Assembly: GCF_011386835.1 (NCBI RefSeq)
Contig: NC_088810.1
Location: 20,584,001 to 20,648,000, forward strand
Direction of reading: 5' to 3'
Length of the DNA: 64,000 nucleotides
Source: Chrysemys picta bellii
Taxonomy: Eukaryota
Below, piece after piece: positions 8,948 through 8,987 of the stretch (its first letter is position 1; each line of letters begins with the position of its first letter). The notes beneath the pieces are model-generated. The model worked only from the letters and a program-made list of their open reading frames with translations. It did not search any database and was not told the DNA's origin. Made by a program: the position numbers and the translations under genes.

Positions 8948-8987
8948 CTTTGAAGAGATAATCATACTCATCGTCCTTGCCACGCAT
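8948..8987 (-). CDS. First coding exon of a RAB11-like GTPase gene ([13 protein letters not shown], phase 1); remaining exons not in window
   Basis: The translation shares DDEYDYLFK with the RAB11A/B N-terminus ([13 protein letters not shown]). It has an A at -3 (GGCAGGATG) and a donor AAAG|GTAACT at the conserved Rab11-family intron-1 position. Confidence 0.8.

What the first reader, a model, noticed from the sequence alone, without database searches (positions are those of the whole stretch)
8948..8987. Orphan RAB11-type first exon: a RAB11-like gene in tandem behind RAB25
Seen: ATG-CGT-GGC-AAG-GAC-GAT-GAG-TAT-GAT-TAT-CTC-TTC-AAA-G|GTAACT, i.e. [13 protein letters not shown]. It has the same 40-nt length and phase-1 donor as RAB25 exon 1 and lies about 6.1 kb past the RAB25 stop on the same strand. 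Known: RAB11A/B begin [13 protein letters not shown], RAB25 is the third Rab11-family member, and human has no RAB11 gene between RAB25 and MEX3A. Inference: this is a separate Rab11 paralogue retained in turtles and lost in mammals. It may be the 1q22 ohnologue of RAB11A/B (possibly orthologous to teleost rab11al) from which RAB25 arose by tandem duplication. I found no exon 2-5 in 1-8947, so either intron 1 exceeds 8.9 kb or the gene is a relic.
Basis: partly seen in the sequence, partly recalled or inferred. Interest (0 to 1): 0.82.

Follow-up and report, generated by a model that had tools for sequence, protein, structure and literature searches.

The report
First exon of annotated Rab11A-like gene
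The 40-base stretch is the real, expressed first coding exon of an already annotated turtle gene ("ras-related protein Rab-11A-like", the counterpart of fish rab11al) whose other four exons lie just outside the window, so it is an ordinary gene and not an orphan relic.

Summary
On the minus strand, 8987..8948 reads ATG...AAAG|GTAACT and encodes [13 protein letters not shown]. It lies 6,141 bases past the RAB25 stop and has the same 40-nt length and phase-1 donor as RAB25 exon 1.

It is not an orphan. The window is 99.6% identical to Chrysemys picta bellii chromosome CM062337.1. There this exon opens a five-exon GT-AG gene (40/196/194/81/140 nt) that translates exactly to XP_008170209.2, "ras-related protein Rab-11A-like", 216 aa. 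Intron 1 is 11,181 bases, so exon 2 starts about 2.2 kb left of the window.

A spliced 2.3-kb contig from a related turtle's sequencing run joins this exon, exactly at 8948, to exons 2-5. Small transcriptome-sized runs of four species hold the exon block but not its flanks.

The gene is annotated in more than 15 turtles, and in birds, crocodilians, squamates and amphibians. It forms one clade (99/98) with ray-finned-fish rab11al, and it keeps the slot after RAB25 (RAB25-rab11al-MEX3A in stickleback). Platypus and hamster have nothing in that slot.

Whether RAB25 arose from it by tandem duplication cannot be decided (AU p = 0.43). Interest is low to moderate.

The parts
8948..8987 (-). Coding part of exon 1 of the Rab-11A-like gene (rab11al orthologue): ATG plus 12 codons plus the first base of codon 14 ([13 protein letters not shown], then G of Val14)
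   Evidence: sequence; identical to L003 10001-10040, the first exon of the gene that encodes P0272; only synonymous differences across turtles and Parus; spliced contig L013 nt 88-127.
8942..8947 (-). 5' splice site GTAACT of intron 1 (phase 1)
   Evidence: the spliced contig L013 stops matching the window exactly at 8948 and continues in exon 2 of L003 (21222).
8988..9170 (-). 5' untranslated part of exon 1. At least 87 nt (8988-9074) is transcribed in a related turtle; up to about 9150-9170 is inferred from word shares.
   Evidence: L013 nt 1-87 align to 9074-8988, contiguous with the ATG; run X3 holds 0.89 of the sampled words of 8948-9170. Searches compared: the same runs hold almost nothing of the flanks 8400-8947 and 9171-9600. 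The upstream end is not determined.
9137..9141 (-). CCAAT motif in a block conserved among turtles, at or just upstream of the transcribed block. Candidate promoter element; there is no CpG island here.
   Evidence: sequence; conserved in all seven turtle sequences, including Pelodiscus. CpG observed/expected is 0.27-0.51 around 8800-9400. Function not tested.
1..8941 (-). First 8.9 kb of intron 1 (11,181 bases in the conspecific assembly). Exons 2-5 lie about 2.2-4.7 kb beyond the window's left edge.
   Evidence: window position 1 corresponds to L003 18987. L003 exons at 21222-21417, 22142-22335, 23337-23417 and 23545-23684; no Rab-like coding remnant in 1-8947.
15128..27164 (-). RAB25, the upstream tandem neighbour. 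Five coding exons: 27164-27125, 18487-18292, 17088-16895, 16465-16385, 15258-15128.
   Evidence: The protein is identical over the tree's kept columns (exon 1 left out) to the emydid RAB25 cluster P0412.
33436..35567 (-). LAMTOR2 exons (synteny context)
   Evidence: tblastn with the LAMTOR2 part of P0276.
39900..52000 (+). UBQLN4 (synteny context, approximate extent), starting in the CpG island at 39.3-40.5 kb
   Evidence: ORFs with the ubiquitin-like start and STI1-type repeats. CpG island; the same order UBQLN4-LAMTOR2-RAB25-Rab11A-like in Parus major.

Best explanation
Window 8987..8948 (minus strand) is the first coding exon of an intact, expressed gene for a fourth Rab11-subfamily small GTPase. 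NCBI annotates it as 'ras-related protein Rab-11A-like', and it is the orthologue of fish rab11al. The gene lies in tandem directly behind RAB25. Its 11.2-kb first intron carries exons 2-5 out of the window. The product (216 aa) keeps every element of a working Rab11. These are the [9 protein letters not shown] N-terminus, the GDSGVGKS P-loop, switch I and II identical to RAB11A/B including the catalytic Gln in WDTAGQE (RAB25 has Leu there), NKSD, ETSAL, and a C-terminal CCQNI site for double geranylgeranylation. It differs from RAB11A/B mainly in the C-terminal hypervariable tail. It most likely works as a GTP/GDP switch on recycling-endosome membranes and recruits the usual Rab11 effectors. 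Its membrane targeting or tissue use may differ, because the tail differs and the promoter has no CpG island. Shown: exon, gene structure, splicing, conservation, orthology, synteny, absence in two mammals. Inferred: biochemical function, effector use, expression pattern.
For: Sequence and frame. Conspecific locus: L003 (Chrysemys picta bellii GCA_011386835.2) is 99.6% identical to the window over 19.9 kb. It carries exons of 40/196/194/81/140 nt, all GT-AG, that translate exactly to P0272 = XP_008170209.2. Splicing: the Logan contig L013 (SRR27880518, 2,306 nt) holds the whole 216-aa ORF. It matches window 9074-8948 at 94.5%, then jumps to exons 2-5 of L003. Transcription in the window's own species label: 14 small 'RNA?' runs from 6 studies and 4 organisms hold 0.33-0.89 of the words of 8948-9170 but only 0.06-0.17 of 8400-9600. 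The word counts are nearly equal, so the flanks are absent. Purifying selection: turtle proteins differ at 1-8 of 216 positions, and exon-1 DNA differences are all synonymous. Family: the best PDB matches are RAB11A (381 bits), then RAB11B (345), then RAB25 (260). The G domain is 92% identical to RAB11A and 74% to RAB25. Orthology: the tetrapod plus fish clade has 99/98 support, and A102 and Q110 are diagnostic. Synteny: stickleback rab25-rab11al-mex3a; Parus UBQLN4-LAMTOR2-RAB25-Rab11A-like; fused public gene models in Mauremys, Polypterus and sturgeon.
Against: Exons 2-5 were not seen in the window's own assembly; they are inferred from a 99.6%-identical public assembly of the same or a very close species. 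No read-level junction data could be obtained for the window's species, because read laying was lost to a filter error. The runs that hold the exon are only guessed to be RNA. The spliced contig comes from another turtle genus. No functional data exist for the sauropsid protein.
Confidence: 0.95

Rival explanations
1. It is an orphan relic: a pseudo-exon left behind after the rest of a Rab11-like gene decayed.
For: No Rab exon 2-5 or remnant lies in the 8.9 kb downstream within the window.
Against: The conspecific assembly has intact exons 2-5 starting 2.2 kb past the window edge. A spliced transcript exists in a related turtle. The exon block is held by transcriptome-sized runs. The protein is almost invariant among turtles.
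Confidence: 0.02
2. It is ordinary RAB11A or RAB11B that has relocated next to RAB25, not a separate paralogue.
For: The protein is 81% identical to RAB11A and 79% to RAB11B, and its nearest solved structures are RAB11A. Some databases name the turtle protein 'Rab-11A'. In the tree the clade groups with RAB11A (93/100), and RAB11A itself is not resolved as one group.
Against: The Rab-11A-like sequences form their own starred clade (99/98) apart from RAB11A and RAB11B. Species carry them side by side. Ficedula has RAB11A (P0355) and the Rab-11A-like protein (P0287, P0109). Eretmochelys has RAB11B (P0299) and the Rab-11A-like protein (P0268). The position behind RAB25 is conserved from teleosts to birds.
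Confidence: 0.02
3. It is a chance open reading frame, or an alternative 3' or 5' exon of RAB25 or another gene, and not the start of its own gene.
For: It is only 40 nt long and lies downstream of RAB25 on the same strand. Public fused models join RAB25 and Rab11A-like exons.
Against: Nine of nine residues match the Rab11 N-terminal motif, with the ATG and the donor at the family's positions. The spliced contig begins in the 5' UTR just upstream and carries no RAB25 sequence. The fused models skip exon 1 of the second gene and look like annotation errors.
Confidence: 0.01

Closest known systems
Teleost/gar rab11al ('RAB11a, member RAS oncogene family, like'; zebrafish ENSDARG00000014340)
   Same: It falls in the same clade (99/98) and has the same 216-aa length. 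It shares the diagnostic residues A102 and Q110 and the QRQ at the start of the tail. It occupies the same slot directly behind rab25, and in stickleback it lies in front of mex3a.
   Different: The N-terminus is MRGK in sauropsids, versus MTNR, MSGR or MANR in fish. The tail is only about 50% identical and ends CCQNI instead of CCQNN, CCQGN or CCQSN. Zebrafish papers treat rab11al as 'rab11ab', a second RAB11A orthologue (PMC12434753). The synteny and distribution found here point instead to an older paralogue shared with tetrapods.
RAB11A / RAB11B
   Same: The G domain is 91-92% identical. Residues 14-56 and 61-95, which include the P-loop and both switch regions, are identical. The exon layout and the CC-type prenylation end are the same.
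   Different: It is a separate clade and a separate locus. V102A and R110Q are substituted, and Tyr96 replaces His in tetrapods. The hypervariable tail is only 35-49% identical. There is no CpG island at the start.
RAB25 (Rab11C), the upstream neighbour
   Same: It is a tandem neighbour on the same strand. Coding exons 1-4 have identical lengths (40/196/194/81 nt) and phases. Both belong to the Rab11 subfamily.
   Different: RAB25 has Leu in place of the catalytic Gln (WDTAGLE), GESGVGKT in the P-loop, and EEDYNFVFK at the N-terminus. It is only 62% identical overall and sits on a long stem branch. RAB25 is kept in mammals, whereas the Rab11A-like gene is not.

Membership tests
Rab11 subfamily of Rab small GTPases | N-terminal subfamily motif (D/E)(D/E)EYDYLFK directly before the P-loop strand | tested here: met
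   Window 8987..8948 encodes [13 protein letters not shown]. The motif is aligned with RAB11A/B.
Rab11 subfamily of Rab small GTPases | Nucleotide-binding motifs: P-loop [15 protein letters not shown] with catalytic Gln, NKSD, ETSAL | tested here: met
   All are present in P0272, encoded by exons 2-4 of the conspecific locus L003, which lie outside the window. Pfam PF00071 Ras is listed for the product.
Rab11 subfamily of Rab small GTPases | C-terminal double-cysteine prenylation motif | tested here: met
   P0272 ends in CCQNI, the same ending as RAB11A.
Rab11 subfamily of Rab small GTPases | Closest relatives by sequence are Rab11 proteins, not other Rabs | tested here: met
   PDB search: RAB11A 381 bits, RAB11B 345, yeast Ypt31/32 about 270-275, RAB25 260, RAB1 about 190.
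Rab11 subfamily of Rab small GTPases | GTP binding and hydrolysis, recycling-endosome localisation, binding of Rab11-FIP effectors | not testable with these tools
   Inferred only, from switch I/II being identical to RAB11A/B.
rab11al orthogroup (vertebrate 'Rab-11A-like') | Monophyly with fish rab11al to the exclusion of RAB11A, RAB11B and RAB25 | tested here: met
   The clade of 19 sequences (13 tetrapod, 6 ray-finned fish) has 99/98 support and appears in 98% of bootstrap trees.
rab11al orthogroup (vertebrate 'Rab-11A-like') | Position directly downstream of RAB25, same strand, before MEX3A | tested here: met
   Downstream of RAB25, same strand: window (6.1 kb), seven turtle loci from the six turtle assemblies plus a second Lepidochelys one, Parus, stickleback. 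MEX3A as the next gene was seen only in stickleback. It is not within 10 kb in Chrysemys L003. The Ascaphus locus shows no RAB25 within 10 kb.
rab11al orthogroup (vertebrate 'Rab-11A-like') | Diagnostic substitutions A102 and Q110 (RAB11A/B and outgroups have V and R) | tested here: met
   Column-by-column group consensus and alignment.
RAB25 | Leu in place of the catalytic Gln (WDTAGLE) and GESGVGKT P-loop | tested here: not met
   The gene has WDTAGQE and GDSGVGKS, so it is not a RAB25 copy.
RAB11A orthologue | Single-copy orthology: no other RAB11A in the same genome | tested here: not met
   Ficedula albicollis has both RAB11A (P0355) and the Rab-11A-like protein (P0287/P0109). The Rab-11A-like sequences form a separate starred clade.

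The most novel reading that the evidence does not exclude
The Rab-11A-like/rab11al gene, not RAB25, may be the direct counterpart of RAB11A and RAB11B in the 1q22-type chromosome region. It would have been left there by the early vertebrate genome duplications. RAB25 would then be its fast-evolving tandem copy, which lost the catalytic glutamine. Mammals later deleted the conservative parent and kept only the derived copy. That would also mean zebrafish rab11al is mislabelled as a fish-specific duplicate of rab11a ('rab11ab'). The evidence allows this: the RAB25+Rab11A-like clade costs only 1.9 log-likelihood units (AU p = 0.43), and the exon structure and tandem position are shared. But it does not favour it: the free tree leaves RAB25 unresolved, and no shared derived residues were found.
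Probability: 0.3. Interest if true: 0.45.

Novelty: already known. Interest (0 to 1): 0.22.

Why it matters
For the scan, this shows that a lone conserved first exon near a window edge can simply belong to a gene with a long first intron. It is not a relic.

For biology the yield is modest. Non-mammalian jawed vertebrates (ray-finned fish, amphibians, squamates, turtles, crocodilians, birds) carry a fourth, highly conserved Rab11-type GTPase behind RAB25. Platypus and a rodent lack it.

Work that equates zebrafish rab11al with a fish-only extra copy of RAB11A, or that transfers mammalian Rab11 redundancy arguments to chicken, frog or fish models, should take this gene into account. Its automated names are inconsistent and hide its identity. 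They include 'Rab-11A-like', 'Rab-11A', 'Rab-25' and 'RABD2c-like'.

Tried and rejected
No read-level junctions were obtained for the window's species.
- The search of earlier findings by place and by words gave nothing relevant.
- An exact look-up of the mis-predicted Ficedula protein P0109 was not on record.
- A motif scan and a tblastn for Rab exons in 1-8947 found nothing, as expected once the intron length was known.
- AU tests of four alternative groupings rejected none: RAB25+AL p = 0.43, A+B p = 0.21, AL+B p = 0.15, RAB25+B p = 0.34.
- A search for residues shared only by RAB25 and the Rab-11A-like clade found none. The origin of RAB25 therefore stays open.
- The first tree used mis-spliced RAB25 representatives (P0020, P0049) with absurd branch lengths, and was redone with proper RAB25 sequences.
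- MEX3A was not found within 10 kb downstream of the gene in Chrysemys.
- The Ascaphus locus shows a kelch gene, not RAB25, within 10 kb upstream.
- The marsupial locus came back without DNA.
- Literature searches for rab11al, rab11ab, 'Rab-11A-like', and Rab11/Rab25 with duplication or loss terms found no paper that describes the tetrapod gene or its loss in mammals. The library does not cover most subscription journals.
- An acceptor-like 'cacctag|G' at about 9006 was considered as a sign of an upstream non-coding exon. It was rejected, because the spliced contig runs straight through it.

Full report
**Observation.** The minus strand of window 8948-8987 reads ATG CGT GGC AAG GAC GAT GAG TAT GAT TAT CTC TTC AAA G, followed by GTAACT. 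This encodes [13 protein letters not shown] plus the first base of the next codon.

RAB25 lies upstream on the same strand. Its coding exons are 27164-27125, 18487-18292, 17088-16895, 16465-16385 and 15258-15128. RAB25 exon 1 ([13 protein letters not shown]) is also 40 nt with a phase-1 G|GT donor. The RAB25 stop is 6,141 bases from the candidate ATG. A tblastn of the window's own RAB25 protein at E up to 100 found no Rab-like exon or remnant in 1-8947. RAB25's own first intron is 8.6 kb here, so a long first intron was plausible from the start.

**Context.** LAMTOR2 (minus strand, 35567-33436) and UBQLN4 (plus strand, from the CpG island at about 39.9 kb) lie beyond RAB25. The order UBQLN4 / LAMTOR2 / RAB25 is the one also seen in Parus, platypus and hamster. 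The candidate exon sits where MEX3A would come next in mammals.

**Is it transcribed?** Read laying was lost to a filter error, so I compared two word searches.
- In the 1,201-base stretch 8400-9600, small transcriptome-sized runs (labelled 'RNA?', a guess) hold only 0.06-0.17 of 114 sampled words.
- In the 223-base stretch 8948-9170, the same runs hold 0.33-0.89 of 18 words.
- The absolute counts agree: X3 about 17 versus 16, X5 about 9 versus 9, X7 about 8 versus 7.
- So what these runs hold is confined to the exon block, and the intron and upstream flanks are missing.
- This covers 14 runs from 6 studies and four organism labels.

**Finding the gene.** A search of 1.84 billion representative proteins with RAB25 exon 2 returned P0109. 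This is a mis-spliced Ficedula model that begins [25 protein letters not shown].

Searching with its first 121 residues gave a family of 216-aa proteins that NCBI names 'ras-related protein Rab-11A-like'. It occurs in turtles, birds, crocodilians, squamates and amphibians, followed by fish 'RAB11a, member RAS oncogene family, like' (rab11al). No mammal was among the 120 best hits.

Cluster look-ups list the protein for Chrysemys picta bellii (XP_008170209.2), Trachemys, Malaclemys, Emys, Mauremys, Gopherus, Chelonoidis/Platysternon, Chelydra, and Chelonia, Caretta, Lepidochelys, Eretmochelys and Dermochelys. They also list it for Pelodiscus, Carettochelys, Emydura and Pelusios. Turtle sequences differ from one another at only 1-8 of 216 positions, and all cryptodires start [14 protein letters not shown].

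**The gene around the exon.** Seven turtle loci (from six turtle assemblies plus a second Lepidochelys one) were fetched.
- L003 (Chrysemys picta bellii GCA_011386835.2, CM062337.1) is 99.6% identical to the window's minus strand over 19.9 kb. Window position 1 corresponds to L003 18987.
- In L003, the exons 10001-10040, 21222-21417, 22142-22335, 23337-23417 and 23545-23684 measure 40/196/194/81/140 nt. All have AG/GT borders and translate exactly to P0272.
- The first of these exons is base-for-base the window's exon.
- Intron 1 is 11,181 bases. Exon 2 therefore begins about 2,235 bases left of the window, and the stop codon lies about 4.7 kb left.
- Exons 1-4 have the same lengths as those of RAB25.
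- In every turtle locus a 212-214-aa Ras-family gene (RAB25) ends 6-8 kb upstream on the same strand.

**Direct evidence of splicing.** The identical Mauremys reevesii protein is also encoded on a 2,306-nt Logan contig from run SRR27880518 (L013) as one uninterrupted ORF.
- Nucleotides 1-127 of this contig match window 9074-8948 at 94.5% and stop exactly at the donor.
- The contig then continues in exons 2, 3, 4 and 5 and about 1.6 kb of 3' UTR of L003.
- The donor at 8948 is therefore used in a related turtle. The 5' UTR runs straight through the acceptor-like 'cacctag' at about 9006.

**Selection.** Across seven turtle sequences and Parus, the exon's only differences are synonymous third-position changes. 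The 260 bases upstream, including a CCAAT motif at 9141-9137, are well conserved even in Pelodiscus, whose surrounding non-coding DNA is only about 77% identical. There is no CpG island at this promoter.

**What the protein is.**
- The best solved-structure matches are RAB11A (381 bits), RAB11B (345) and, much lower, RAB25 (260).
- The G domain is 92% identical to RAB11A, 91% to RAB11B and 74% to RAB25.
- Residues 14-56 and 61-95, which hold the P-loop and both switches, are identical to RAB11A/B.
- The catalytic Gln of WDTAGQE is present, where RAB25 has Leu.
- The tail ends CCQNI but is only 35-49% identical to RAB11A/B.
- From established knowledge of Rab11 proteins, this predicts an active GTPase of recycling endosomes that can use Rab11 effectors. 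This is inference, not test.

**Relationships.** I built a maximum-likelihood tree (LG+C20+F+G4) of 60 Rab11-family proteins. Exon 1 was left out, because many database models have wrong first exons. Rows dropped were P0012, P0013, P0020, P0049, P0325 and P0382, for mis-spliced or aberrant ends.
- The tetrapod 'Rab-11A-like' and fish rab11al sequences form one clade (99/98).
- That clade groups with RAB11A (93/100).
- RAB11B is separate (92/92).
- RAB25 is monophyletic (100/100) on a long stem, and its position is unresolved.
- A102 and Q110 are fixed in the clade, against V and R in RAB11A, RAB11B and the outgroups.
- AU tests reject none of the alternatives: RAB25+AL p = 0.43, A+B p = 0.21, AL+B p = 0.15, RAB25+B p = 0.34.
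- No residue is shared only by RAB25 and the clade.

Orthology with rab11al is therefore well supported. The origin of RAB25 is undecided.

**Synteny.**
- Stickleback has rab25 (+), rab11al (+) and mex3a (-) in a row.
- Parus major has UBQLN4 (-), LAMTOR2 (+), RAB25 (+) and Rab-11A-like (+).
- Fused public models in Mauremys (LAMTOR2+RAB25+Rab11A-like), Polypterus (RAB25+rab11al) and sturgeon show the same adjacency.
- In platypus and the hamster Phodopus, RAB25 is followed after 5-6 kb by MEX3A on the opposite strand. There is no called gene and no tblastn trace of Rab-11A-like exons between them, and there are no gaps in the sequence.
- The marsupial locus had no DNA available.
- The loss therefore appears to predate the split of monotremes and therians. 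This rests on one monotreme and one placental genome.

**Literature.** In the searchable library, rab11al appears only in zebrafish and catfish papers. One calls it 'rab11ab', one of two RAB11A orthologues (PMC12434753). I found no paper on the tetrapod gene or on its loss in mammals. Subscription journals are mostly not covered.

**Verdict.** The exon is not an orphan. It is exon 1 of a gene that public annotation already carries in this species and in dozens of others. The remaining open point is whether RAB25 is a tandem derivative of this gene, and these data cannot settle it. Novelty: already known. Interest: low to moderate.

Noticed in passing
window 37955-39130: Minisatellite of about 30 copies of a 39-bp unit (81% matches), just upstream of the UBQLN4/LAMTOR2 CpG island. 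It creates long open frames of proline-rich repeats (PLIPTFHPQLP...) that are probably not coding.
   Followed up: partly
window 9415-10315: Low-complexity TG/CA-rich stretch directly upstream of the Rab-11A-like promoter block. It gives overlapping ORFs rich in Cys, His and Thr on both strands. It aligns poorly to the sea-turtle locus (80% identity over 10089-10238 and an unaligned gap at 9907-10088).
   Followed up: no
public proteins P0276, P0155, P0160/P0168, P0177, P0178, P0181, P0193, P0195, M7BGW9_CHEMY: Database problems around this gene pair. There are fused LAMTOR2+RAB25+Rab11A-like or RAB25+rab11al models. Rab-11A-like proteins carry the UniProt name 'Rab-25'. Chelonia's copy is named 'Rab-11A'. 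A Ficedula isoform is named 'RABD2c-like'.
   Followed up: partly
literature (PMC12434753) versus loci L008, L009, L003: Zebrafish rab11al is described as 'rab11ab', a second RAB11A orthologue. The synteny behind rab25 and the presence of orthologues in tetrapods argue that it is not a teleost-specific duplicate.
   Followed up: partly
window 18001-18700: The only CpG-rich patch within RAB25 lies over its exon 2, not at exon 1 (27164-27125), which is 8.6 kb upstream.
   Followed up: no
window 39894-39998: A 31-bp G-rich unit is repeated 3.4 times (97% matches) inside the CpG island at the start of UBQLN4, within the Gly-rich N-terminal coding region.
   Followed up: no
L011 (Ascaphus truei) 1-10000: In this frog, the gene upstream of the Rab-11A-like gene within 10 kb is a kelch-repeat gene on the opposite strand, not RAB25. 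RAB25 is on the same 117-Mb chromosome record. This is either a large intergenic distance or a rearrangement.
   Followed up: no
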